Shown one piece after another: positions 15,577-63,960 of a stretch of 64,000 nt of DNA. A model generated the notes under the pieces. The model made no database searches and was not told the origin of the DNA. It saw only the letters and a program-made list of their open reading frames with translations. Source of the DNA: Heteronotia binoei (lineage: Eukaryota); NCBI RefSeq assembly GCF_032191835.1, contig NC_083225.1:53754001-53818000 (forward strand). Reading direction: 5' to 3'. The position numbers and the translations under genes are program-made. Numbering within the stretch: position 1 is the first letter of the stretch; every line of letters begins with the position of its first letter.

Positions 15577-16245
15577 TATTACATCTTACTTCGTGTAAAT
15601 AAGGCCCATAATAGAATATTTCAATTTAAAAAAAAAAAAAAAACAGCATCAAGATTCCTTTAAAGAAGTTGGGAGAGGGGTTAGAGATCAAAGAAGTTAA
15701 TGCTAAAATTATTCTAAAACTTCTGGCATGTCCACAAGAAAGACAGATCCTAAATGGTAAGTGTAACATGGCTTTTGATGACAAAGGAATGCTGGGTTTA
15801 TTGTAGGCTATGGTGAGTTTATCATTGGTTGTGCAAATTGTAAAAATGTTTATAATAGACTACAAACAACAAAAGTTTTTTTTTCTGAAAATGGAATCTT
15901 ATCATTTGGCACAGGAGGGAAACCTCTTCAGTCAGGCCTGACGCAGCCCTTCACAATCTGCTTTCACCTTTGCAGCTCTGTTTCTGGAATGAAGTCAGTC
16001 AGAGACTGGTGCTATCAGACCAAATGCAGCAGATGCTGCTTTACAGTATGGTGGGTGCCTTTATGGCTGCAAATATGGAGCATGCCTCAAAGGCTTCTGT
16101 ACTGATGCAGAAGCATTTAAGTGTTCTCCGATAATGCACCAAGAAAAGGGCACTTGCCAAGTTATTCAGCCACAAGAGCTTGATCTTCCTGTTTCAGTTT
16201 GCAGTATTTATTTCACAAGCAGCTAAATCGGTGAGAGATTATCTC

Positions 16246-16972: not shown

Positions 16973-17727
16973 CAGGGATGTCGAACTCATTTGTTATGAG
17001 GGCTGGATCTGACATAAATGAGACTTTGTTGGGCCGAGCCATGTTGGGTTGGGCCAGACCATGTGTGTGCCTATTTAAGATTAGGTAGCAGAGATATAAC
17101 CTTTATAAAGGACACAAACACAATTATTATTTTTTAAAAACTTAAAACATGCTTAAAACATTAGCACTCACTCTTAAAAGTACTTTCTTTGTATTTCTCC
17201 TATGGGATTCAGGGAACTGGGCAAAGGAAGTTCTGGCTCTTTCCTTCCTTCCCCAGGGGACCAGGAGGGGGAAGAACCTCAGCCAACAAAAGGGAGAGAG
17301 GCTTAGCTCAGTAGCTTTGCTGTGAGATTGAGCCTGGAAAAACAAGCCCTGCCAATGGAGAAAATAGAGGTTTTGCTCTGTAGCTCCTGTGCAATTGAGC
17401 AAGCCTTGCAAAGTAAGGAAGCAAAAGAGAAGGAAAAGGAAGCAGATGACAGCCAGTTGCTCAGGAGCCTGATAGGAGACCTCCAGGGACCTGATTTGGC
17501 CCCCAGGCCCAAGCCCAGGCCCAGATCTTCATGTTTTTTGATGGGGGGGGGCAACATTAAAAAAAATGGTGCCCCCTTATGGGCCATTCTATCTTATGGT
17601 CCCATAGAATATAATGAATTCCATACCCAATTTGGCACCTCCCTCCGTTGGCACCCAGGACAAGCACCCCACTCTGCCCCCCCCCCCTAGATCTGGCCCT
17701 GTCCAGGCCACATGTTTGATACCCCTG
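16973..17727. mobile_element. Non-autonomous hAT (CAGGGGTGTCAAAC TIR family) with a nested MITE at 17516-17701
   Basis: TIRs CAGGGATGTCGAAC / GTTTGATACCCCTG; perfect TSD GGCTAAAG; inner element CAGGCCCAGATCT...AGATCTGGCCCTG. Confidence 0.9.
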
Positions 17728-21459: not shown

Positions 21460-22270
21460 CTTCCTGTGGAAAAAACCGCGGGGGCGTGGGCGGGGGGAGG
21501 AGACACTACACGTGCGCGCCAATTCCTTTGGGGGAGGGGGGCGGCCTATACTTTCCGGTCTTGGGCGGGACGAAGGAAGCCGGCTTTGGGCGGTTGAGGG
21601 AGGAGCAAAAGGCGCGCCACAGCAGCTTCTGCCTTCTCCCCTCCCATTTCTAGTCAGTCAGTTCGGGGGAAAGGGGGCGGGAGACCGATGCTGATTATCT
21701 GAGCCGCTGAAGCGGCATCTTTCCCTGTGTCAGCAGCAGCGCTGGAGTGAGCCGGCGGGCGGGCCACGTCGTGTGGCCGGGAGACCATGTTACTGGTGCG
21801 GCGCGTGGCGCTGCCGTTGCTGCTGCTGTTGCTGGCGGCCGCGGGGTGCCCGCGAGTGGCCTGGTCGCTGGTGTGGTACTCGGCTTGGGTGACCACGGTG
21901 TACACCGAGCCCGGCACCAACCGCACGGTACGGGGGAGCGCCGAGAGCGGCCGCTACGGGGACACCTCGCCCAAGGAGGGCGCGCAGGGCCTGGTGGGCA
22001 TCCCCCGAGGCGTGGGTAGCCGCCACATGGAAGGCTGTGCCCCAGACGTCGAGTATGAGGTGCCCATGCCTCCCGGCGCCAACCGTGGGTCTCCTCCTCC
22101 TCCCGCCTGGATCGCTCTGGTGTCCCATGGCGGATGCAGACTGAAGGACAAAATCGCCAACGCAGCGAGGAAGAGGGCGGCCGCCGTGGTGGTCTATAAC
22201 GAGCCCCATTTCGGCAACTCTACCCTGACCATGCCGCACCTCGGTGAGTGAAAGAGGGTTTTTAGGGGCG
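21460..22270 (+). promoter_or_regulatory. CpG island / promoter of RNF149
   Basis: CpG-dense GC-rich stretch with GC boxes (GGGCGG ~21488, ~21563), E-box CACGTG ~21509 and ETS-like TTCCGG ~21553, running through exon 1. Confidence 0.75.
21787..22243 (+). CDS. RNF149: RNF149 exon 1 (signal peptide + PA domain)
   Basis: gagaccATG; hydrophobic leader MLLVRRVALPLLLLLLAAAGCPRVAWS; PA-domain motifs GRYGDTSPKEGAQGLV and WIALVSHGGCRLKDKIANAARKRAAAVVVYN; donor G|gtgagt (457 bp, phase 1). Confidence 0.95.
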
Positions 22271-28180: not shown

Positions 28181-31100
28181 AGATTAACCCTGCAAAAATC
28201 TATCCAAGAGTTGGAAGCTTTACATAAACGTACTTGTGCCAAGAAGGCCTACAAAAAATTATTACTTGAACGCAAAAAATTGGAGCTATTAGAATCCAGC
28301 ACTATTAAGAAAAACCTCCTGTTCACCAAACAAAAATATTGGTTCAGCCACCCCAGATCCTTAAAGATCCTCTCATGGAAACTCAGAACAGAACTAGCAG
28401 ATCGACAAATCCACCTAATTAGAGATGCAACAGGGAAAACCCACTCTTCCCCTCCCAAAATCAGACAAATTTTCCAGGAATTTTTTCAAAAACTATATAC
28501 CTCTAAAAACCCAGACCCAGGTCTTATAAAAAACTTTCTCAATAAACCCGAAATCCTCCAAAAATTGGACTCAGATCATCAAAGCTGCATGGACTCTCCA
28601 ATTACACCATTGGAAGTCCAATCAGCAATTAAAAACGCCAAAATCAACAAGACTCCAGGGAGGGATGGCTTCCAGTCTGAGTTCTATAAGAAATTCTCTC
28701 AAAATATTCTCAAACCTTACACAGAAATCTGCAACCATGTCCTGGACTCCGGAACAATCCCCGAAAGCTGGAAACTAGCAAAAATAATTTTAATACCTAA
28801 AAAGGAAAGGGATCTACTAGACCCAAAAGCGTTCCGCCCAATTTCTCTCCTCAACACCGACTATAAATTTCTAACTTCTATTCTAACCGCCCGTCTAAAC
28901 TCCTTCATTGGCCAATACATTCATGAGGACCAGACAGGCTTTATCCCAAAACGTCAAATCACAGATAACATTCGCCAAACCATTAACATCATCCAATATG
29001 GCAAATTCCAACCCTACGAGTCGTGTATTCTGGCTTTGGATATTGAGAAAGCCTTTGATAGTGTGGAACCCACATACTTACTCTTAGTTTTGAAAACAAT
29101 GGGGTTCGGTCCTAAATTTCTATCAACTATAGAGTCTCTTTACTCTTCCCCGAAAGCCCTGCTGAATATCAATGGGGTTTCAACCCCAGACTTTTCCCTC
29201 TCTAGGGGGACCCGCCAAGGGTGCCCTCTTTCCCCACTGTTGTTCGCTATAGCAATTGAACCACTAGCAAACTACATAAGGCAATCCTCCTCCATCCACA
29301 GCATCAGCATTAACAACGCTAACTATAAAATTAGCTTATTTGCAGACGACATGGCCCTTTACCTAAAAAACCCTTTGGAATCTTTGGCGATACTGTCTCC
29401 CTTCCTCCTGGAGTTTGGAAGGTACTCAGGGTTATCTACTAACTTATCTAAATCCCTTATTTTCCCAATAAATATCTCCTCAGATACCCAATCATCAATT
29501 AAAGCCTTGTACCCTTACCAATGGGTTAACTCATCCTGGTCATATTTAGGAGTAAAGATCCCGGTCGACCTTAAAGACCTTCTCAAATTAAACTACTCAG
29601 CAGTATACCAACAAACAACAACAGCTCTACAATCATGGAACCCCTTAGCTCTGTCGTGGATAGAACGGATTAACACAATTAAGTCATTTATTTTTCCAAA
29701 ATACCTCTACTTATTTCGAGCCCTCCCCATTAACATTCCAGCAACACTATTTAAGAAATGGCAGGCCCTACTGACAAACTTTATATGGGGTGATAAACCT
29801 CCCAGAACCCGCTTTACCACAATCAGAAGGCCCAAAAATAAAGGAGGAATAGCTTTCCCTGATCTGTACCTTTACTATAAAGCCTCTGTAGTATCTTCCA
29901 TGGTCAACATACTATACATAAGACCGGGCCCAGCATGGGTCTACATAGAAGAGACCCACATATCCCCCTACAAATACCATGAATTTCTATGGCTAAAGAA
30001 AAAAGACCGCCCTTCTTGGACTATACTCAATACTTTAAGTCAGGCTTTAATCACAATTTGGGACCAGGTCCGGAAGGACCTGGCCCCGGATCTATCTATT
30101 CTCTCCTCATTTCTAAAACAGCCCTGGTTCCCCCCAGCTCTCCAGTTTCCCTCATTCTGCTCTTGGGAAACTGCTTCAACGGTCTTTCTATTCCAACTCT
30201 TCAGCAAAAACAGAATTAAAACGAAGGCTCAGTTAGAGGAATCCACAACCGTTAAGATCCCCTGGTTTGAATACTTACAAATCTGCCACTTCCTTAACAG
30301 CTCTTTCTCAAAATTGGCTACCACTAGGCCCAAAACGGACTTTGAATATCTGATTTCTCAACCCTCTTTAAACACCAAGGGCCTCATCTCTAAAATCTAT
30401 CGCATTCTACTACAGCAGGCCTGTAGCAGTCTACCATCCTACTGCGAAAAATGGCACAAAGAATGCAAACTCACACTTACCAACACACAATGGGAAGCCA
30501 TATGGGAATCAGAAGTCTGCAAGACCAAATCAATAGCAATTTTTCAACAGAACTACAAAATTATGTCAAGATGGTTCCGCACTCCCTTGCACTTCGCCAG
30601 TATCGACAATAACTATTCCCCACTTTGTTGGCGTAATTGTGGCATGCAAGCCTCATCACTACACTGTTGGTGGGACTGTCCGATTGTCAACTCTTTTTGG
30701 CAAAAGGTTATTACCCAGGTAGAAAACATTTCCGGAACTACAATCCCAAGACAAGTTGAGACCATCATTCTAAATGATTGGCACTCTGTAAAGGCTACAA
30801 GTTCTAAACTATCCCTTATTATCTCGCTTATAACTGCAGCCAAAAACATAATAGCCCTGAACTGGAAATCTAAGCTCAATCTGTCCATAGATAATTGGAT
30901 CCTCAAAATTTGGGACTTCATCACGATGGAAAAAATCACAGCCGGCATAGACACCATAGATCCGATAAAGGCAGCTAACGATTTCTATGCAAAGTGGTAT
31001 CCAATTCTGGATAGGATAGAGGTTGACACCACTCTTTCTTCTTCACTTAACCAACGGGTTACCCACAAGAGTATTCTTTTCTCGTGATCACTCTATAGCT

Positions 31101-39885: not shown

Positions 39886-41328
39886 GTAGGTAACAACTAT
39901 GCTGTATGTTTAAATCTTTCACATTCTAAAAAGGGAAAATTTTGCCCACAAAATTCCAAACATACTCATCTGTTCTGAAAATGAACTTTAGTGTAGGTAG
40001 TAGATCCACTTAACAAACACAGAATCATCCCATTCTTCTTAAATAGATCATATGAGTTTCTGTGTTGTCCTTAACAGTGTTGTTTACTGAACCCAAACCT
40101 GAAGCAATAACTTGTTTTACTCACTTTGTCTGTATCTGCTCCTGTAGAATGAAAAATTCACCCATCTTTAATTATACAAACAGTACTTAATAGGGTATAT
40201 TATCCTTATAGAGAATGGGGGCTTAAACACAACTGAGGAGGAGTGAAAGGATGGAGAGGGTCTATGTGGAACTAAGAACATTAAGAAAATTCTCCTTGTA
40301 ATATTGAACAGCTTTTCCCTATTCCATTACCTGCTAGAGACTTTTGAAATAAATCATTTATCTTAAATAGGTTTCCTGTGTTATCTTGACTAGGAATGGG
40401 CATGAACCAGGAAGATAGAGGTTTGTTTCCGTTTATGAGGTTACCTGAACCACAAGCCTTCATGAGCCTCCCTTTTTACTGAACCAGTTTGTTTTGTGAG
40501 GTTTGTTACCAGTGAATGTGCTGCCCCAGCTGATCCTCTCTTACAGCTCCTCCTCTTCCATATCTGCTGGCCTTGGGAGAGCCACCACCAGCAAAAAGGA
40601 AGGAGAGAAAATCTCAGATCTCCCTCCTATTATGTTGGCCTCAGGGAGCTGCCACCAGCAGAAAGGAGGAAGATTGGCTGGCCCAAAGGAGCCAATCCTG
40701 CAGGGAGAATTCTTCCTGCAGGGTGGGCTGGACCATTAACACAATTCAAAGGAGGGAGAACAAAATAGAGGGCAGCCATTTAAACAGAAAAGCTGATGGG
40801 CAGACCCTTTCAGCTGGTAGGTTTAAATTCTTGTAAGCCATTAAACCCCCTGGTTTGCTCCCCCTGCTTTGAAGGGGGGCGTGGTAAGAGAGATTGCTGA
40901 AATGGCTTGCATCTGTTTCAGTCTGAGGTGATAGGCACACCAGCCCTGCTGTTAGGCCGAAATTGATGCAAGCCATTTTAGCGATTCCTCTTGATTCCCC
41001 CCGTCCCCAAGCTGCACAGACCTCCTGATAACCACATGGAGGGTTGTGGGAAGGGTTGTTAACAGGGATGGGCATGAACCTTGGTTTGTGAACTGCGACT
41101 CAAGACAGTTTTTGTGATGAAATTAGGGTTGTGGGGAGATTCATGGCCATTCCTAATCTTGATTTAGTCAAAAACCAAATTAGGATGATCTTGTTAATGA
41201 CAATCTTTTTGGGTCTCTCAGATCTTAAATGTTTTGATGCAATGTAAATAGAAAATGTGTTACTTATTCTTTCTACAATTTAGACATCAGAGCTAGCTAA
41301 TGTTACTACTTCCATCTTTATTTTGCAG

Positions 41329-43429: not shown

Positions 43430-43887
43430 AATACTGCATGAAGTTAAAAAAATAATCTCCTCCCTTGGCTGCTAAATAAATCACAATTGGCCACATAAAC
43501 TTGATATTTTGGTAACATGGACCATAGTTTTGACAATGCAATTGAATGACTCAACTAGTTTTCTCCTATGAACTAGCTCTGTTAGGTCAATTCACATATG
43601 ATAGTTCCAGCTTTCTACTTCTTTAAATGTCATTCTTTTAACATAGTACGTTCTTTTTTAAAATGACTGTAAAAATAATATTCTTTTCTCTGTATAGTTT
43701 TAAAGCAGTTGAGCCAGAATCTTCAAACCTTTACTCTGTATAGATTCCTAGAGGTTTAAAGCACACTAAATAACAAAGCATACATGACTATTTCTTTTCT
43801 CACACAGGTGTTCTGGAACTCATTCAGGCAAGCCCAGTTGAAATATTCAGACTGATCTGTAAATCAGAATTACTGAAGTGTTATGCC

Positions 43888-43893
43888 AATAAA
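43888..43893 (+). terminator. Candidate RNF149 distal poly(A) signal
   Basis: AATAAA followed by GT-rich sequence, downstream of SNORD89 and of a candidate acceptor at 43807. Confidence 0.5.
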
Positions 43894-44794
43894 GGTTCTG
43901 TGACTGTGAATTACTGAAGTTGTATGCATACGTGCTGGATAGAAAAAAAAAATGTTCATGGATCCAAGTCAAAGTTAAAAATAATTTTGTGTAAGGCCAA
44001 GATCACTTTTCTTCCTGGTGTTATATTCTGTGTAAAATTTTATGATACTGCTGCATACTGTTACTATCTTCAGGAAGTATTTTCTCTTTTGAAGCACCTG
44101 AGACTCCTGTGGTCTCCCAGCCACACATAAGTGTAGCAATAGTAGAAATACAGCTTAATAAGCACAGCTCACTTACTGAGCTACAGAAAGTATTCCTTTA
44201 ATTGGTTTTGGTTCTTTTTAAAAATGCCTAGCCTAATGCAGAAAATCAAAATTACTACTTTAAATTAGTCATTTAATGAACAGAGCTTGTACCATGTGAC
44301 TGTCCACCTTTGTAAGATATGATCTAGTTTCTTTAATGCATTGTACAAAGCAATCAACTTAATGTTTGGAAGCAAGGCATTTCTCTAAAAAATCCTTTTA
44401 TCAGGACAAAATTAAGGTCCATTTTGCACTTTTACAGGGTATGTTGATGTTTTATGTTGAAGTCCAGAAATTAAAAATTTGATGTTATGACATGTCTCAC
44501 AAGTAAGCTACAGGGGCTGTTACTGAAGTATCTGCACTAAGTTGTATATTTAAACAAATTATAAAAACTTTTGTAAAAGTTGGTGTTCGTCTGTTGTATA
44601 AAAGCTGTTTATTTATGGCCTGTCAGCATAACTATGTAGGTTTATTCAATTGAAATGACAAATTGTATCCTGAAAATGGGAAAAGAGGGAGAAGAGTCTC
44701 CTTATGCCCACTTAGGGTGGCCATAATGTCTGAAGGCCAGCCAGGGACACCTTGGGGGGGGGGAAGGCAGGAGTGCGCGCGAAGCGCGCGCGCC

Positions 44795-45080
44795 GCCGGA
44801 AACAGGAAGTGACGTCACTTCCGGCGACGTCATACCACCGCCGGAAACAGGAAGTGACATCACTTCCTGTGACATCATTTCCCCCGCGCCACCTGCCGGA
44901 AACGGGAAGTGACATCACTTCCTGTGACATCATTCCCCCCGCGCCACCTGCCGGAAGCAGGAAGTGACATCACTTCCTGTGACATCATTTCCCCCAAATG
45001 CCACTGCCGGAAACAGGAAGTGACTTCACAGCACTTCCTGTGACGTCCCCAAAAATCCCCCAAATATCACCGCCGGAAAC
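44795..45080. repeat. Tandem array of 45-66 bp units rich in GGAAGTGAC(G/A)TCACTTCC
   Basis: Units begin GCCGGAA at 44795, 44840, 44895, 44950 and 45006; a truncated sixth starts at 45072. Confidence 0.9.
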
Positions 45081-45974
45081 AATTTTGTTCTCAAATCCTG
45101 TATATACTTCATCAGTATATGGGATAAGGCACTTTCTCAACTGTGCTGCATAATGCAGCCTATTTATTTTGTCCTGTTGGCTCTGTTGGCTCTATCTGCG
45201 CCACCTTCATCACTTTCGGGGTGTGGATCCCCCAGTGGGGTGGGCTCCCGACTCCCTCCGCCGGCTGTTTCTGATAGCCCTGCGCCCCCTCTTTCATTTG
45301 ATATGTGTCCCGTGCGGGTGCCACCCTCCTGCCGGGAGATGCCGCAAAATGAGCCCCCTTGAGGCTTATGGCGGCAGGGCTCGGGGGAAGCAAGCTAGAC
45401 TGCTGTTCTTTTGAGGGGTTATAGAGTGTTTCGAGCCCCTCCCTGTGGCATTGGTCCCATCGTCGTGGGACCCAGGGGGCCGGCGCAGCAGCCTGCCGAA
45501 GCAGCCTGTCACTAATAACACAGGTCGAGATGCGGAAGTGACTGACAGGCTGCTTCAGCGGGCCGCTGCGCCGGCCCCCTGGGTCCCACAACGATGGGAC
45601 CGATGCCACAGGGAGGGGCTCGAAACACTCTATAACCCCTCAAAAGAACAGCAGTCTAGCTTGCTTCCCCCGAGCCCTGCCGCCATAAGCCTCAAGGGGG
45701 CTCATTTTGCGGCATCTCCCGGCAGGAGGGTGGCACCCGCACGGGACACATATCAAATGAAAGAGGGGGCGCAGGGCTATCAGAAACAGCCGGCAGAGGG
45801 AGTCGGGAGCCCACCCCACTGGGGGATCCACACCCCGAAAGTGATGAAGGTGGCGCAGATAGAGCCAACAGAGCCAACAGGACAAAATAAATAGGCTGCA
45901 TTATGCAGCACAGTTGAGAAAGTGCCTTATCCCATATACTGATGAAGTAAATACAGGATCTGAGAACAAAATTG
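45080..45974. repeat. Long inverted repeat: 432-bp arms, 31-nt spacer
   Basis: 45080-45511 pairs with 45543-45974 without indels; 8 mismatches by manual comparison. Confidence 0.95.
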
Positions 45975-45984
45975 CACCAGAAGA

Positions 45985-46115
45985 CACAAACACAAAGCTC
46001 CCTTACACTGAATCAGTGCTTGGGTCCACCAAAGTCAGTATTGTCCACTCCAGTCACAAACACAAAGCTCCCTTACACTGAATCAGTGCTTGGGTCCACC
46101 AAAGTCAGTATTGTC
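45985..46115. repeat. Two 61-bp direct repeats (period 70) resembling the SINE/CR1 tail, followed by further tail-like fragments up to the gap
   Basis: CACAAACACAAAGCTCCCTTACACTGAATCAGTGCTTGGGTCCACCAAAGTCAGTATTGTC at 45985 and 46055. Confidence 0.85.
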
Positions 46116-46228
46116 ACATAAGAACATAACAGAAGCCCTGTTGGATCAGGCCAGTGGCCCATCCAGTCCAAAACTCTGTGTCACATAAGAGAAGCCCTGT
46201 TGCATCAGTCCAACACTCTGCGCCACAT

Positions 46229-46428
46229 NNNNNNNNNNNNNNNNNNNNNNNNNNNNNNNNNNNNNNNNNNNNNNNNNNNNNNNNNNNNNNNNNNNNNNNN
46301 NNNNNNNNNNNNNNNNNNNNNNNNNNNNNNNNNNNNNNNNNNNNNNNNNNNNNNNNNNNNNNNNNNNNNNNNNNNNNNNNNNNNNNNNNNNNNNNNNNNN
46401 NNNNNNNNNNNNNNNNNNNNNNNNNNNN
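46229..46428. other. Assembly gap (200 N)
   Basis: Run of exactly 200 N; true size unknown. Confidence 0.99.
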
Positions 46429-46529
46429 CCCCCCGCTTTCGGCCCCCTTACCTGCGGTGGCGGGCGGCGGCGAGTCGGGCGGCGGCGGCGGGTCGGGCGG
46501 CGGCGAGGCCAGGGAGGCGTCGGAGAGGC

Positions 46530-47130
46530 CTTCCTTGGCCGGCGCTGGCCCGGGAAGGCCTTCCAGAGGCTCTGGAAGGCCTTCCCGGACCAGCGCCGGG
46601 TGCTCCGCGGCCTCCGCTGGTCGCTGGGGGCCTTCCAGACACTCTGGAAGGCCCCCAGCGACCAGCGGAGGCCGCGGGGAGGCCTTCGCTGGCCGGCGCT
46701 GGCCCGGGAAGGCCTTCCAGAGGCTCTGGAAGGCCTTCCCGGACCAGCGCCGGGTGCTCCGCGGCCTCCCCGCGGCCTCCGCTGGTCGCCTTCCAGAGTG
46801 TCTGGAAGGCCCCCAGCGACCAGCGGAGGCCGCGGGGAGGCCTTCGCTGGCCCGGGAAGGCCTTCCCGGACCAGCGCCGGGTGCTCCGCGGCCTCCGCTG
46901 GTCGCTGGGGGCCTTCCAGACACTCTGGAAGGCCCCCAGCGACCAGCGGAGGCCGCGGGGAGGCCTTCGCTGGCCGGCGCTGGCCCGGGAAGGCCTTCCA
47001 GAGGCTCTGGAAGGCCTTCCCGGACCAGCGCCGGGTGCTCCGCGGCCTCCCCGCGGCCTCCGCTGGTCGCTGGGGGCCTTCCAGACACTCTGGAAGGCCC
47101 CCAGCGACCAGCGGAGGCCGCGGAGAGGCC
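46530..47130. repeat. GC-rich minisatellite (~154-bp unit, 4 copies) built from nested palindromes
   Basis: Hairpin with 35-bp arms and 3-nt loop (e.g. 46605-46677) alternating with a ~30-bp-arm hairpin centred on TTCCAGAG-G-CTCTGGAA. Confidence 0.9.
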
Positions 47131-47487
47131 TCCCCCACCGCTGCCGGCCCCGCGCGCGGGCAAGGCGGGGAGTGAGGGAGGGAGCGTCCCTGCGCAGGTG
47201 CAGGGACGCTCCCTCCCTCACTCCCCGCCTTCCCCGCCGGCGCCCGCGGCCCACCGGCTCCGGGGCTGGCTAAACCGGGACCTTTAATGGTCCCGGTATA
47301 GGCAGCCCGGGAGCCGGGATTGGGTGGCCAGAACCGGGAATGTCCCGGGAGACCGGGACGGTCTGGCCACCCTATGCCCACTGGATCATAGGACTCACTT
47401 TGGTAAAAGCCAGAGAGGTCAGGGAAAAAAAGGAATTAAGAATCTATTATTCAGTCTCTCCCAAGTGTTTTCTAGAGTTTGATTTCC

Positions 47488-47493
47488 TTTAAT
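47488..47493 (-). terminator. Candidate CNOT11 poly(A) signal (ATTAAA)
   Basis: TTTAAT on + about 950 nt past the CNOT11 stop; no minus-strand AATAAA seen between 47400 and the stop. Confidence 0.4.
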
Positions 47494-48439
47494 TGCTTGT
47501 TATTTTTCCTAATTCTTGAAACGTTAGGCCAAAATCAATCACTCCCAAGCACTGTTAATATGTCTGAAGTTGCATTATCTTTGAATTTCTCACGGCAACA
47601 CTTACAGTCTAAAAGTTATGCTGTATTTATAGATATCACAACTGGATTTTTTTCTCCGCTATGACTATATATAGAAAGATATATTAAGTCAGCTTGATCA
47701 TAAAAACTCCTTAGCTGTTCATATTGTTATGCAATCATGTATAGGTTCATATCCACAATTACAATGAAGCATGTAAACAGAAATGTATATAACTCCTTTT
47801 ACAAAGGCAAAACCTCTCATTTTTATATTCCCAGGGTTGGGGTGAATGCACCAAAGGCTAGAAGAAGGGGGCTGACTTCAAACCACTAGTCAGCCCAGCT
47901 TTCCAACTACTACCTGATCTCTCCTTTGGAGACTATCTGTAGAAGATTTGTATTAGAACTGTTCATTTTACAGAATTACAAAAAATACATTTAAAAAATA
48001 GTTGAGCCATAGTCTGCTATACTATATTCAGAAGATTTTACATTAGAATACTCTGGGGAAAGTGCCTCAACACTGTTTCAGAGAAACTGTTCAGGAACAT
48101 TTGGCAGTTTCAGCTTTTACATGTAAATTAAAAGGATTAATAGTAGAAAGCCTGTACCTTAAATACTACATGGGCTTGAATTTCAGATATAAGAAATATT
48201 TCCAAAAGTAGCAACTTCTCCCCACGTTTGTAGTCCCATAAGCAAGTATCCCCGCAGAAGTTCCAATACAAACTAACAACCAAAGGCAATGTCAAACAGA
48301 AGCTTATAGTACAGTGCCAGACTCAGACTCCTTTAACACCAGAAAAAGTATTTAATACAGCACAAATAGCATCTTAATTGCAAGCAATAATGCAATCAAC
48401 TATACAAGTCAAACAGTCCAAAGTACAGTCTTTCAAGTC

Positions 48440-48709
<270 letters not shown>

Positions 48710-49062
48710 TTAAATTTGATTTTATTAGCTAAGCACTATATTTACTTCATACAATTCAGTAAATCTTGCAGCAATTCTACATTTTAATCCAGCAACAAAT
48801 GGATACTTTACTACCATATATTCTGTAGTTGCTGGTATACCTATTTCGCTCTTCTAGCTGAAACAGAACAACCTTCAATAGAATGTAGTGTGTTTTGTGC
48901 CATCAAGTGGCTTCCAACTTTATGGCTACCCTATCATTAACACCCTTGACCAGGCTAATTTAACAGAACAGGTTTAAAGATGCCCCACCCTCAAATTCAG
49001 ACTCCTAGAAGCAAAAATTGTACATCTTCAAACCCCAGATGACGTTTCCTTCTGTACTACGG

Positions 49063-49661
49063 CAGGGCTGTCAAACATGTGGCCCAGGGGCCAAATCAGG
49101 CCCCTGGAGGTCTCCTATCAGGCCCCTGAGCAACTGGCTGTCATCTGCTTCCTTCTTCCTCTCTCTTAGCTTCCTTCTGCGTAACAGCTTGCTTTGCAAG
49201 GCTTGCTCAACTGCACAGGAGCTGCAGAGCAAAACCTATTTGCTCCATTGGTTGAGGCTCCTCCCTTGGGGAGGAAGGAGGGAAGTGAGAGCTTGCTTTG
49301 CCAGGCTATCTCAATTAAGTAGAGCTACTGAGCCAAGCCTCTCTTCCTTCTACTGGCTGGGGCTCCTCCTCCAGGTCCCCTGGGGAAGGAAGGAAAGAGC
49401 CAGAGCTTCCTTTGCCCAGTTCCCTGGATCCCATGGGAGAAATACAAAAGTGCTTTAAGATCAATGAGTGCTAATGTTTTGAGTATGGTTTATTTATTTA
49501 TTTTTTTAAAAAAAATCTTTGTGTTTGTGTACTTTATAAAATTTGTATCTCTGCTATCTAATTTTAGATAGGTACACACATGGCCCGACCTGACACGGCC
49601 TAGCCCGATGTCTCATTTATGTCAGATGCGGCCCTCGTAACAAATGAGTTTGACACCCCTG
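49063..49661. mobile_element. Non-autonomous hAT (CAGGGGTGTCAAAC family) in CNOT11 intron 6
   Basis: TIRs CAGGGCTGTCAAAC / GTTTGACACCCCTG; reverse orientation to the 16973 copy; degenerate TSD TACTACGG/ATCTATGG. Confidence 0.88.
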
Positions 49662-59847: not shown

Positions 59848-60055
59848 AACATATGAAGCTGCCTTATACTGAATCAGACCTTTGGTCCATCAAAGTCAGT
59901 ATTGTCTTCTCAGACTGGCAGCGGCTCTCCAGGGTCTCAAGCTGAGGTTTTTCACACCTATTTGCCTGGACCCTTTTTTGGAGATGCCAGGGATTGAACC
60001 TGGGACCTTCTGCTTCCCAAGCAGATGCTCTACCACTGAGCCACCGACCCTCCCC
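59848..60055 (-). mobile_element. Young tRNA-derived SINE (same family as 1109-1327)
   Basis: Reverse complement differs from the 1109 copy at 2 positions over about 205 nt. Confidence 0.9.
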
Positions 60056-61513: not shown

Positions 61514-62116
61514 CGGGTGTCAAACATGCAGTTTGGGGGCTGAATCAGGCCCCCAGAGGACTCCTTGGCAGGGCGGGTGGGGTATAAATCAAATTAAACT
61601 TGAAACTATCAGGCGCCCCCCCCCCCCAGCAACTGACTGTGATCTGCTTCCTTCTCTGTTTCGTTCTGCATAACAGTTTGCTTTGCAAGGCTTGCTTAAT
61701 CGCACAGGAGCTACAGAGCAAAACCTCTGTTTTCTCTGTTGGCTGAGGTTCCTCCCTTGGGGAAGAACGGGGAAGGAATAGCTTGCTTGGCCAGCCTCTC
61801 TCAATTGCACAGTGGAGCTACTGAGCCAAGCCTCTCTTCCTTCTATTGGCTGAGGCTCGTCCCTCCCCCTAGTCCCCTGAGGAAGGAAGGAAAGAGCCAG
61901 AGCTTCTTTGCCCAGTTCCCAGGATCCCATAGGAGAAATACAAAGAAAGCATCTTTAAGACCAATAAGTGCTAACAGTTTAAGCATTTTTTAAAAATATA
62001 TTTGTGTTTGTCTGCGTTCTTTGTATCTCTGCTACCTAATCTTAAATAGGCCCGGCTCCTCAAGGTCTCATTTATGTCAGATCCGGCCCTCATAACAAAT
62101 GAGTTCAACATCCCGG
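61514..62116. mobile_element. Non-autonomous hAT (CAGGGGTGTCAAAC family) in CNOT11 intron 1
   Basis: Body homologous to 49063-49661; TSD GTATAAGA/ATATAAGA. Confidence 0.85.
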
Positions 62117-63059
62117 ATATAAGAGACTTAGAATGGTACAGGCTATGAAAGAAAAAGAACTGGTTTTTATACCCTTCTTGTGTCTACTCTGAGGGGTCTC
62201 AAAGCAGCTTACAATTTCCTTTCTCTCCTCACAACAGGCCCCTTGTAAGGTAGGTGGGGGCTGAGAGAGCTCTAAGAGAACTGTGACTGGCCCAAGATCA
62301 CCCAGAAAGCTTGTGGAGGAGTGTGAATTGATCCCAGTTCTCCAGTTTAGAATTGGCAGCTCTTAACCACTACACCACACTGGCTTTCCTAGTTTCTAAA
62401 TACACTCATAAAATAGATACTGTTCTATTACAACTGGATAAAAATCAGCATGCACTAAAGGGCAAGATGCACCTTAATGCTGATTATTATTAATCATCAG
62501 GGTCCACACTGTAATAACAGAAGGGAACAAAAGTCTTAAACCACACTTTACTGAAAGGTCTTAAACCACACGACTGATCACCAGAGCTGGGAAATTAAGA
62601 GAAACTGTTCCAGATTCCTCAGTGAAGGCTACAAGATCCATCCATAAAACATGTAACATGTGAGAAAGATGGGGCATCAAAGTTATAACAAAGGATACAG
62701 TTAGCATTGCTTAAAATGGCTGTATTATAAAGGGGCATCCATGCATGGTTTTAAAAAATGCAGGGGGAAAGAGAGAAGATAATGGATTTATATCCTGCCC
62801 TGTACTCTGAACCTCAGAGGGGTCACAATCTCCTTTACACCTTCCTCCCCCCACAACAGACACCCTGTGAGGTAAGTGGGGCTGAGAGAGCTCTTATAGC
62901 TGCTGCCCTTTCAAGGACAGCTCTGCGAGAGCTATGGCTAACCCAAGGCCTTTCCAGCAGCTGCAAGTGAAGGAGTGGGGAATCAAATCCGGTTCTCCCA
63001 GATAAGAGGCCGCTTACACCACTACACCAAACATGGCCATAAACAAGGTCATCTCTAAA

Positions 63060-63960
63060 AGATGCTTTAACGGAGAAGCCAGTTCCCGAGGCGGAGTACC
63101 TGAGAGCGGGGGTCTCTCGCCGTCGTCCCCTCCTCCGCCAGCGGGGCCAGGGCCGGCGTTTGAGGAGGAGGAGGCGCGCTCGGGGGGCGCGGGGTTGAGG
63201 AGGTGGGCGAAGATGGCGGCGAAGGGGTTGGCGGCCAGGGGCTCGGTGCGGTACATCTCCCACAGCAGGTAGAGGGCGGTGAGGCGCTGCGGGGGGCTGG
63301 GCAAGAGGTCGGGCTGCTGAAGGAGCAGCACCAGGACGGAGCCCACGCGGAAGTGCTCGGCCTTGCCGAAGTAGTGGTGGAAGGCGGTGGAGAGGCCCTC
63401 GAAGGTGCTGCCTCCGGCCTCCTCCGACACGATGCTCAGCAGGCTCGACAGCTCCTTCGGCGAAAGACTCATCTTCTCCCCCGCCGGCGGCGGCGACACC
63501 GCCTCGCTGCTTCTACTAGGGCTGCTGGGGCAGCTGCTAGAGCCGCCGCCGCCCGGAATCGAACCTGCACTCGCCGCTGCGCTGCCAGCCTCGGAACTGA
63601 TGCCAGCCTCACCCCCGGGCATTCAGCGCCTCCCCGCCCGCTGCCTCACTTGCGCGTCCGCGCGCGCACCTGCTCAATTACCGCCGCAGCTACTTCTACG
63701 GCCGCCACCGACGCGGCCTCATGGCTTCATCCTTCCGCGCGCGCATGCTTCAGTAACGTGTCCCCATTTGCGCATGCGCGCTACCATCTTCTTCCCTCCC
63801 TCCCTGTAGCTACTGCTAAAGATCCCTGTTCCAAGCGGGCTTTCTTTCCCCCCGCCCATCATTGTCGTAAAGCCATGGGGAGGGGCCGGGAGGGAAAGAC
63901 GGCGGTTTCTATGGGAAGACTAGGAGTTCGCGGGTTCCCCCGCAAAGAGATTGGTCCTTT
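63060..63960 (-). promoter_or_regulatory. CNOT11 CpG island / promoter with NRF1-type sites
   Basis: CpG-dense; TGCGCATGCGC at 63769-63779 and GCGCATGC at 63741-63748 match the NRF1 consensus. Confidence 0.75.
63100..63622 (-). CDS. CNOT11: CNOT11 exon 1
   Basis: ATG at 63622; low-complexity MPGG... leader, then [18 protein letters not shown]...[28 protein letters not shown]; donor G|gtactc; 523 bp; total CDS 1542 nt = 513 aa. Confidence 0.95.

What the first reader, a model, noticed from the sequence alone, without database searches (positions are those of the whole stretch)
45080..45974. 432-bp-arm palindrome with mirror-image AATAAA signals: possible bidirectional terminator and long dsRNA source
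Seen: the arms pair with no indels and 8 mismatches around a 31-nt spacer. Six of the 8 mismatches are CpG to TpG/CpA changes, the signature of germline methylation, which argues against a sequencing fold-back artefact. AATAAA lies at 45886-45891 on + and at 45163-45168 on -, so a transcript entering from either side passes the loop and most of the second arm before meeting a poly(A) signal. Inference: read-through from RNF149 or CNOT11, or from the adjacent ETS/CRE array, would give a polyadenylatable hairpin of about 350 bp. That is a substrate for ADAR, Dicer or MDA5, and the DNA could extrude a cruciform.
Basis: partly seen in the sequence, partly recalled or inferred. Interest (0 to 1): 0.7.

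Follow-up and report, generated by a model that had tools for sequence, protein, structure and literature searches.

The report
Long hairpin inside a jumping gene
The 895-base palindrome is real, but it is internal cargo of a recently inserted, multi-copy cut-and-paste (hAT-type) transposon lying between two gecko genes that both end before reaching it, so it is an ordinary transposon feature with no sign of terminator or double-stranded-RNA function.

Summary
Arms 45080-45511 and 45543-45974 pair over 432 nt with 8 mismatches around a 31-nt loop. Six mismatches are CpG transitions (P = 2e-5), three lost in each arm.

The palindrome is not free-standing. It lies inside a non-autonomous hAT element at 44713-47374, with 11-bp inverted ends (TAGGGTGGCCA) and an 8-bp target duplication (TGCCCACT).

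Public reads add four points:
- One contig joins 44702 to 47373 exactly, which is an empty-site allele.
- Contigs from another study cross both outer palindrome junctions without a mismatch.
- Arm, ETS-array and terminus depths far exceed the depth of unique flanks, so this looks like a multi-copy family.
- The RNF149-type gene's 3' ends pile up at 44515/6, 565 bp before the palindrome. No reads lie at 47550-48011 on the CNOT11 side.

No 3' ends are listed after either AATAAA. The A/G and T/C differences in the arms are fixed variants, one also seen in a run the index guesses to be DNA.

A fold-back assembly artefact is very unlikely, although no listed record crosses the loop. The dsRNA potential is physical only (-952 kcal/mol if transcribed). 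The terminator reading is not supported. The scan has already met similar hairpin-carrying hAT elements in this genome.

The parts
44705..44712 (.). Left copy of the 8-bp target-site duplication TGCCCACT
   Evidence: Identical 8-mer at 47375-47382. The empty-site contig in X1 keeps one copy.
44713..47374 (.). Whole non-autonomous hAT-type element. It is 2662 bp as assembled and contains a 200-N gap, so its true length is unknown.
   Evidence: The 11-bp inverted ends TAGGGTGGCCA / TGGCCACCCTA each occur only once in the 64-kb window. The TSD is 8 bp. An X1 contig skips 44702->47373 with 10 shared letters. The element's ORFs are pseudo-ORFs through the repeats; only the arm ORFs were scanned, and they matched no family.
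44793..45079 (.). Tandem ETS/CRE-like array (45-55-bp units, GGAAGTGAC(G/A)TCAC) abutting the left arm
   Evidence: TRF. Depth about 3000 in X1 against about 5 in the unique flank. An X4 contig at 44980-45134 crosses into arm L with 0 differences.
45080..45511 (+). Left arm of the palindrome
   Evidence: X7 (guessed DNA) contig 45083-45342 has 3 differences.
45512..45542 (.). 31-nt loop. Its last 10 nt, CGGAAGTGAC, repeat the ETS-array motif (reverse complement at 44814-44823).
   Evidence: One X1 contig follows arm L into the loop up to 45533 and then differs (table 7). No listed record crosses the loop with 31 letters on both sides.
45543..45974 (-). Right arm of the palindrome
   Evidence: X4 contig 45570-45949 has 6 differences, and X4 contig 45920-46014 crosses the outer junction with 0 differences.
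45163..45168 (-). AATAAA motif on the minus strand (mirror of the next part)
   Evidence: No pile-up of 3' ends is listed downstream of it in X18 (table 6).
45886..45891 (+). AATAAA motif on the plus strand
   Evidence: No pile-up of 3' ends is listed downstream of it in X18 (table 6).
45985..46228 (.). Patchwork of interspersed-repeat fragments: a 70-bp unit x1.9, then a very high-copy SINE-like repeat running into the gap
   Evidence: TRF. The 51-bp core is also at 59856-59906 and 1258-1308. Depth is 16,000-330,000, with 67-bp 'goes back' joints in three runs.
46229..46428 (.). Assembly gap (200 N), left unfilled
46429..47363 (.). GC-rich (76%) nested-hairpin minisatellite and right subterminal region with CCGGGA repeats
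   Evidence: Read depth is near zero in all four runs at 46472-47241 but high at 47242-47395.
47375..47382 (.). Right copy of the target-site duplication TGCCCACT
44515..44516 (+). Main 3' end of the plus-strand PA-domain (RNF149-type) gene. It lies outside the element, 197 bp before it.
   Evidence: X18 fragment ends: 16 begin and 21 end here. Depth falls from 55-59 to 21-25 to 3-4 per mate orientation (tables 2 and 6). ATTAAA is at 44470.

Best explanation
The palindrome is a genuine inverted duplication inside the non-coding cargo of a non-autonomous hAT-type DNA transposon. That element inserted recently between the converging 3' ends of a PA-domain (RNF149-type) gene and CNOT11 in a gecko.

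Shown: the element has hAT hallmarks, an empty-site allele still exists, and its pieces, including the arms and both outer arm junctions, occur in other runs at depths far above single-copy flanks.

Inferred: the inverted duplication arose by fold-back or template-switch repair of a break inside an ancestral element. This is the same gap-filling process that loads hAT elements with foreign DNA. The 10-nt ETS-array motif at the right end of the loop may be a junction or filler scar. The two arms have since decayed independently by methyl-CpG deamination, 3 CpGs each. The 0.5% non-CpG divergence gives roughly 1-4 million years under an assumed rate of about 1e-9 per site per year, and less reliably if the arms undergo gene conversion.

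It has no demonstrated function. Both genes terminate before reaching it, so it is at most an occasional, low-level source of hairpin RNA from read-through or from other family copies.
For: TIR and TSD. Empty site: an X1 contig joins 44702 to 47373 and skips 2670 bases. The 10 shared letters are the 8-bp TSD plus TA.

Independent support for both outer junctions comes from X4, a different study and organism label. Its contigs 44980-45134 and 45920-46014 each have 0 differences and at least 40 letters on both sides of the junction.

Multi-copy signal: in X1 the unique flanks have depth about 4-7, against 75-665 across the arm bins, about 3000 for the ETS array and 233 for the right terminus. 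In X7 (guessed DNA) the flanks are at 0 and the arm is at 8.6. The SINE-to-arm depth ratios are of the same order across the three contig runs: roughly 500-1100 in X1, about 1900 in X7 and about 1150 in X4.

CpG decay: 6 of 8 mismatches, P 2e-5, split 3+3. At 45494 and 45795 the outside reads carry the CpG state, so the TpG/CpA states are derived in this copy.

Non-coding: no Pfam family for the arm ORFs. Only three weak, repeat-driven hits among 1.84 billion proteins, and the two whose sequences I read are unrelated repeat proteins. The arm-arm differences show no codon-position bias.

Termination upstream: X18 ends at 44515/6 and no reads at 47550-48011.

The template-switch and gap-filling origin of hAT cargo in animals is described in PMC8277862.
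Against: No listed read or contig crosses the 31-nt loop with good anchors on both sides. All four runs dip over the inner arms and loop, so adjacency of the arms through this loop rests on the assembly alone.

The palindrome lies 255 bp from a contig end (the gap). Copy number is inferred from summed contig depths, which the tool warns are not copy numbers. I could not search the genome itself.

X18 depth on the element (about 20-30) exceeds that of the adjacent flank (about 7). I attribute this to other copies, but an internal promoter would look the same. Which arm is the original is unresolved. One X1 contig diverges inside the loop at 45533, so some copies have a different centre.
Confidence: 0.8

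Rival explanations
1. Assembly artefact: a fold-back chimeric long read, or a mis-join of two family copies next to the gap, created a palindrome that does not exist in the animal.
For: A 200-N gap lies 255 bp to the right. No listed record spans the loop, and depth dips at the centre in all runs.
Against: A fold-back chimera would mirror the left flank. Instead arm R runs into different sequence that leads to the matching right TIR and TSD, and the empty-site contig skips exactly that span. Both outer junctions are present with 0 differences in an unrelated study (X4). The arm differences are CpG transitions split 3+3, not random errors or indels.
Confidence: 0.05
2. Functional element. On this view it acts as a bidirectional terminator, or as a hairpin-RNA (endo-siRNA / ADAR / MDA5 substrate) locus fed by read-through or by the ETS/CRE array as a promoter. 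It might then silence the hAT family, as the maize Mu killer locus does.
For: The fold is extremely stable. AATAAA lies in each arm. RNA-library reads do cover the arms, and in X18 the element's depth is 3-4 times that of the adjacent flank. ETS/CRE motifs are promoter-like.
Against: Both genes end before the element. No 3'-end pile-up is listed after either AATAAA. The arm differences are fixed and one is also present in a run guessed to be DNA, so there is no editing signature. The X18 changes are A>G 21 and T>C 10 against C>T 31 and G>A 16. Depth ratios to the SINE are alike in the RNA runs and the guessed DNA run, as expected from copy number and not from specific expression. The insertion is polymorphic. 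The arms encode nothing, so there is no transposase target for silencing.
Confidence: 0.08
3. The palindrome is a separate foldback or MITE-type transposon with 432-bp terminal inverted repeats, nested inside the hAT element.
For: The inverted arms are exactly equal in length with a short spacer. Arm depth in X1 is about five times lower than that of the ETS array, so the arms occur in only a subset of copies.
Against: There is no target-site duplication at 45079/45080 versus 45974/45975. Every junction-crossing contig listed shows the same flanks as the window, and no loose ends are listed at either outer boundary (114 loose-end rows were not shown).
Confidence: 0.07

Closest known systems
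Non-autonomous hAT elements carrying captured or rearranged internal DNA (Pack-TIR / Pack-hAT; Tan et al. 2021, PMC8277862), and Ds-type derivatives formed by abortive gap repair
   Same: Both have an 8-bp TSD, short TIRs, no transposase and a patchwork non-TE or repeat cargo. The interior is explained by break repair with template switching, and the elements are multi-copy and polymorphic.
   Different: Here the cargo is non-coding with no identified parent locus. Its most striking part is a long, near-perfect inverted duplication, not a gene fragment.
Inverted-repeat TE pairs in transcripts (for example inverted Alu pairs) that form dsRNA edited by ADAR1 and sensed by MDA5 (PMC12695637; PMC8118290)
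   Same: Two inverted copies of one sequence lie close together near 3' ends of genes. If co-transcribed they would form long dsRNA.
   Different: Those pairs lie inside mature transcripts, and editing is observed. This palindrome lies downstream of both genes' 3' ends, and the data at hand show no editing signature.
Maize Mu killer: an inverted duplication of a transposon that makes hairpin RNA and silences its family (my own knowledge: Slotkin et al. 2005)
   Same: It is an inverted duplication of transposon-borne sequence with hairpin-RNA potential.
   Different: Mu killer duplicates transposase-gene sequence and is transcribed from a flanking promoter. Here no coding sequence is duplicated and transcription through both arms is unproven.
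DNA palindromes formed by fold-back priming at double-strand breaks (my own knowledge: yeast and mammalian palindrome-formation work; also an earlier scan note on a 779-bp palindrome in this genome, s1-322616)
   Same: Both have a short asymmetric spacer, equal arms and no TSD.
   Different: This one is carried within, and apparently amplified by, a mobile element.

Membership tests
hAT superfamily, non-autonomous element | 8-bp target-site duplication | tested here: met
   TGCCCACT at 44705-44712 and 47375-47382.
hAT superfamily, non-autonomous element | Short terminal inverted repeats (about 10-25 bp, typically starting C/TAG) | tested here: met
   TAGGGTGGCCA at 44713 and its reverse complement ending at 47374. 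The match is 11 of 11, and each occurs only once in the window.
hAT superfamily, non-autonomous element | Evidence of mobility: a precise empty site in another allele or individual | tested here: met
   An X1 contig joins 44702 to 47373 and retains a single TSD copy.
hAT superfamily, non-autonomous element | Relation to an autonomous hAT with a transposase (BED finger, DDE, hAT dimerisation domain) sharing these termini | not testable with these tools
   Nothing resembling a transposase is visible in the element. Its ORFs run through low-complexity repeats and were not scanned, and the arm ORFs match no family. The genome cannot be searched for the autonomous partner.
hAT superfamily, non-autonomous element | Multiple copies in the genome | tested here: inconclusive
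   Depth of termini, array and arms is 15-600 times that of unique flanks in X1 and is non-zero in X7, whose flanks are at 0. Depth is only a proxy. Earlier first-reader notes of ETS-CRE arrays in other hAT copies are unchecked.
Hairpin-RNA / endo-siRNA locus | A single transcript covers both arms, and 21-23-nt small RNAs map to them | tested here: inconclusive
   RNA-library reads cover both arms, but they cannot be assigned to this copy and none is listed across the loop. No small-RNA data were available.
ADAR/MDA5 inverted-repeat substrate in a 3' UTR | The inverted repeat lies inside the mature mRNA and shows clustered A-to-G changes absent from DNA | tested here: not met
   The main 3' end is at 44515/6, upstream of the element. 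The arm differences are fixed, and the one at 45330 is also in the X7 contig (guessed DNA). There is no A>G excess. Hyper-edited reads would fail the 90% likeness cut, so absence is not proven.
Bidirectional poly(A) terminator | 3' ends map 15-30 nt after each AATAAA, and neighbouring transcripts terminate there | tested here: not met
   No such pile-ups appear in table 6 (one row was not shown). Both genes end earlier. An allele without the element exists.
Fold-back sequencing or assembly artefact | The flanks are mirrored too, arm differences are random errors or indels, and independent data give no support | tested here: not met
   The two flanks differ and are independently confirmed (X4). 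The mismatches are CpG-biased with no indels.

The most novel reading that the evidence does not exclude
The ETS/CRE array carried by this hAT subfamily works as a portable promoter that transcribes the adjoining palindrome into a hairpin RNA of about 430 bp. Copies such as this one would then be natural, polymorphic hpRNA/siRNA generators. They could dampen the family in a Mu-killer-like way, or trigger dsRNA sensing and alter convergent transcription between RNF149 and CNOT11 in carriers compared with non-carriers.
Probability: 0.06. Interest if true: 0.55.

Novelty: new member of a known kind. Interest (0 to 1): 0.2.

Why it matters
As it stands, this is a tidy example of how cut-and-paste transposons in a gecko accumulate and spread hairpin-forming DNA, and of a long palindrome surviving in a vertebrate germline long enough to decay at CpGs. 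The most useful by-product is that the insertion is polymorphic. Animals with and without it form a natural experiment for testing whether a 0.9-kb palindrome placed between two converging genes changes termination, dsRNA load or local stability. No such effect is shown here.

Tried and rejected
- Rfam scan of 44000-48000 at permissive E-values. It gave only sub-threshold generic miRNA-hairpin matches, the best on the palindrome being mir-341 at 31.9 bits against a gathering score of 90. Rejected as chance or hairpin-shape matches.
- tRNA scan. Nothing in the element.
- Captured-exon idea. The arm contains a 116-codon stop-free frame. Pfam gave nothing significant. A phmmer search of 1.84 billion representatives gave three weak, multi-stretch hits, and the two whose sequences I read are unrelated repeat proteins. 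Arm-arm differences show no third-position bias and GC3 is not raised. Rejected. The second long frame (81 aa, other orientation) was tested against Pfam only.
- Own TSD for the palindrome. None found, so nested insertion is disfavoured.
- Other copies of the arm in the 64-kb window. None.
- Exact 30-mer of the arm in metagenome and viral contig collections. 0 hits. These collections do not hold gecko genomes, so this says little.
- Bacterial promoter/terminator scan. Irrelevant to a vertebrate; ignored.
- The search of earlier findings by sequence was blank.
- RING-finger regex to confirm RNF149 found no single-frame match, probably because the motif is split by introns. The gene's identity rests on the PA domain and its position next to CNOT11.

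Full report
**Observation**

The inverted repeat is exactly as described. The arms are 45080-45511 and 45543-45974, each 432 nt, 98% complementary, ungapped, with 31 nt between them. There are 8 mismatches. Six are transitions at CpG sites, one is a non-CpG transition and one is a transversion.

Only 42 of 432 arm positions lie in a CpG, so six or more of eight has binomial P = 2e-5. The losses are split three to each arm, out of 21 ancestral CpGs. AATAAA at 45886-45891 (+) and its mirror at 45163-45168 (-) are present. Because they are mirror positions of one arm motif, they count as a single feature. As RNA the 895 nt fold into one hairpin of -951.8 kcal/mol (z = -92).

I did not fill it or use any read to infer its letters.

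**Context**

The window is vertebrate. Earlier notes of this scan call the genome a gecko, Bynoe's gecko; I did not test the species.

Its exon 1 is at about 21787-22251 (PF02225, E 7e-7). CNOT11 runs on the minus strand. Its exon 1 ORF is at 63014-63622 and its last coding exon at 48440-48703 (PF10155, E 1e-22). The two genes therefore converge on the region.

**The palindrome is transposon cargo**

Prompted by an earlier first-reader note on the same stretch (s1-335906), I checked the ends of the repeat-rich block. TAGGGTGGCCA starts at 44713 and its exact reverse complement ends at 47374. Each occurs only once in the 64-kb window. Both are flanked by the same 8-mer, TGCCCACT (44705-44712 and 47375-47382). 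An 8-bp duplication with short TAG-initiated inverted ends is the hAT signature.

The interior as assembled consists of:
- an ETS/CRE-like tandem array (44793-45079);
- the palindrome;
- a 70-bp repeat whose core belongs to an interspersed repeat also found at 59856-59906 and 1258-1308;
- a very high-copy SINE-like repeat;
- the assembly gap;
- a 76%-GC nested-hairpin minisatellite;
- a subterminal region rich in CCGGGA.

The element's ORFs are pseudo-ORFs running through these repeats. Only the arm ORFs were scanned, and they matched nothing. The element therefore looks non-autonomous.

**Independent reads**

I laid 43700-48300 against four runs:
- X1: RNA-library contigs, organism A.
- X18: raw RNA reads, organism A.
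- X7: a small run the index guesses to be DNA ("DNA?"), organism A.
- X4: RNA-library contigs from another study, organism C.

The results were as follows.

1. One X1 contig (399 nt, depth 4.9) runs from 44338 to 44702 and then jumps to 47373, skipping 2670 bases with 10 letters shared by both sides. Those letters are TA plus the TSD. This is a precise empty site, so the element is a discrete insertion that is absent from some allele or lineage. That contig differs from the window by about 1-1.6% in the flank. X18 shows 12 fixed differences in about 950 bp of flank, so these animals are diverged lineages or haplotypes.

2. X4 contigs cross both outer junctions of the palindrome with no difference from the window. 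One spans 44980-45134 (array into arm L) and one spans 45920-46014 (arm R into the 70-bp repeat). A 380-nt contig also covers 45570-45949 with 6 differences. Two oppositely oriented arm copies with these two different flanks therefore exist outside this assembly.

3. Depths point to a repeat family.
   - In X1, unique flanks sit at about 4-7. The array is at about 3000, the arm bins at 75-665, the right terminus at 233 and the SINE at 331,000.
   - In X7, flanks are at 0, the arm at 8.6 and the SINE at 16,000.
   - In X4, flanks are at 0-3 and the arms at 6-16.
   - The SINE-to-arm ratios are of the same order in all three contig runs, including the one guessed to be DNA: about 500-1100 in X1, about 1900 in X7 and about 1150 in X4. 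This is what copy number would give and what specific expression would not.
   - The tool warns that summed depth is not copy number, so I treat "tens of copies" as an inference.

4. All runs dip over the inner arms and loop (X1 75, X18 about 6, X7 and X4 0). No listed record crosses the loop with 31 letters on each side. One X1 contig follows arm L into the loop as far as 45533 and then differs. The centre therefore rests on the assembly alone, and some copies may have another centre.

**Artefact or real**

A fold-back chimera would mirror the left flank. Here arm R continues into different sequence that is confirmed in X4, and that sequence leads to the matching right TIR and TSD. The empty-site contig removes exactly that span.

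The arm differences are CpG transitions with no indels. At two of these sites (45494, 45795) outside reads carry the intact CpG, so the TpG/CpA states arose in this copy. I put an artefact at about 5%.

**Origin (inferred)**

The palindrome has no TSD of its own, so it is unlikely to be a nested foldback element. Every junction-crossing contig listed has the same flanks as the window.

The last 10 nt of the loop, CGGAAGTGAC, repeat the array motif found 700 bp upstream. This is the kind of short templated or microhomologous stretch left by template switching. The most economical account is fold-back or template-switch repair of a break inside an ancestral element, followed by transposition of the rearranged copy. 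This is the same process proposed for cargo capture by hAT and other TIR elements in animals (PMC8277862).

Non-CpG divergence between the arms is 2 in 390 (0.5%). At an assumed 1e-9 per site per year that is roughly 1-4 million years. The error is wide, and the figure would be an underestimate if the arms undergo gene conversion.

The cargo is not a captured exon:
- The 116-codon open frame in the arm has no Pfam family.
- It has no real relative among 1.84 billion proteins. There were three weak, repeat-driven hits, and the two whose sequences I read are unrelated repeat proteins.
- It shows no codon-position signal.

**Function**

In X18, fragment ends pile up at 44515/44516 (16 begin, 21 end). 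Depth per mate orientation falls from 55-59 to 21-25 and then to 3-4 before the element. The plus-strand gene therefore ends 197 bp before the element and 565 bp before the palindrome.

On the other side X18 has no reads at 47550-48011 and about 1 at 48012-48300. The CNOT11 stop codon is near 48440 with an ATTAAA at 48351 on its strand, so its 3' end probably lies just outside the stretch I laid.

No pile-up of ends is listed after either AATAAA. The differences within the arms (for example 45330 T>C, 45662 T>C, 45724 A>G) are seen in all reads, and one is also in the X7 contig. They are variants, not editing. Overall the X18 changes are A>G 21 and T>C 10, against C>T 31 and G>A 16.

Three caveats apply:
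- X18 is unstranded.
- Hyper-edited reads would fail the 90% likeness cut.
- X18 depth on the element (about 20-30) exceeds that of the adjacent flank (about 7). I attribute this to other copies, but an internal promoter would look the same.

In X1 low-level coverage runs straight across the empty site, so the intergenic zone is weakly represented with or without the element.

**Verdict**

This is a real long palindrome. It is explained as internal cargo of a polymorphic, multi-copy, non-autonomous hAT transposon and has no demonstrated role. The hairpin-RNA potential is a physical property only.

The scan has already followed up several hairpin- or cargo-carrying hAT elements in this genome. 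Those notes agree with this reading, but I did not count them as evidence.

Noticed in passing
window 28211-31087 (+): An uninterrupted 958-aa ORF with a reverse-transcriptase domain (PF00078, E 7e-35) lies inside an intron of the plus-strand gene. It looks like a young LINE copy.
   Followed up: partly
window 46112-46228: A very high-copy SINE-like repeat (summed depth 16,000-330,000 in four runs) abuts the assembly gap. Many reads in three runs show a 67-bp 'goes back' joint, which indicates a tandem-duplicated head in many family members.
   Followed up: partly
window 45985-46115; 59856-59906; 1258-1308: The 70-bp x1.9 repeat right of the palindrome starts with a 51-bp piece of an interspersed repeat that has two fuller copies elsewhere in the window (86-88% identity). 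One of them lies next to a tRNA-Pro-like sequence at 1113-1185, possibly a SINE head.
   Followed up: partly
window 47155-47238: A near-perfect GC-rich palindrome of about 36+36 nt lies just inside the right end of the hAT element. It gives the best, but still sub-threshold, generic miRNA-hairpin Rfam scores (mir-550, 47.6 bits against 81).
   Followed up: no
window 17142-17690; 49018-49458; 61589-61993: Three copies of another repeat give the same pseudo-ORF (…GAKSGPWRSPIRLLSNWLSSASF…). The copy near 49060 begins with a GGGCTGTCAAACATGTGGCCC-type terminus, so this looks like a MITE or DNA-transposon family.
   Followed up: no
window 44515-44516: Raw RNA reads give a sharp 3' end for the RNF149-type gene here, about 40 nt after an ATTAAA at 44470. 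The 3' UTR therefore appears to be about 4.6 kb long, measured from the last coding ORF I assigned by eye near 39893 (it has no Pfam match).
   Followed up: partly
window 46472-47241: The 76%-GC minisatellite part of the element has almost no coverage in any of the four runs, while the termini on either side are well covered. Either GC bias hides it or this block is specific to this copy.
   Followed up: no
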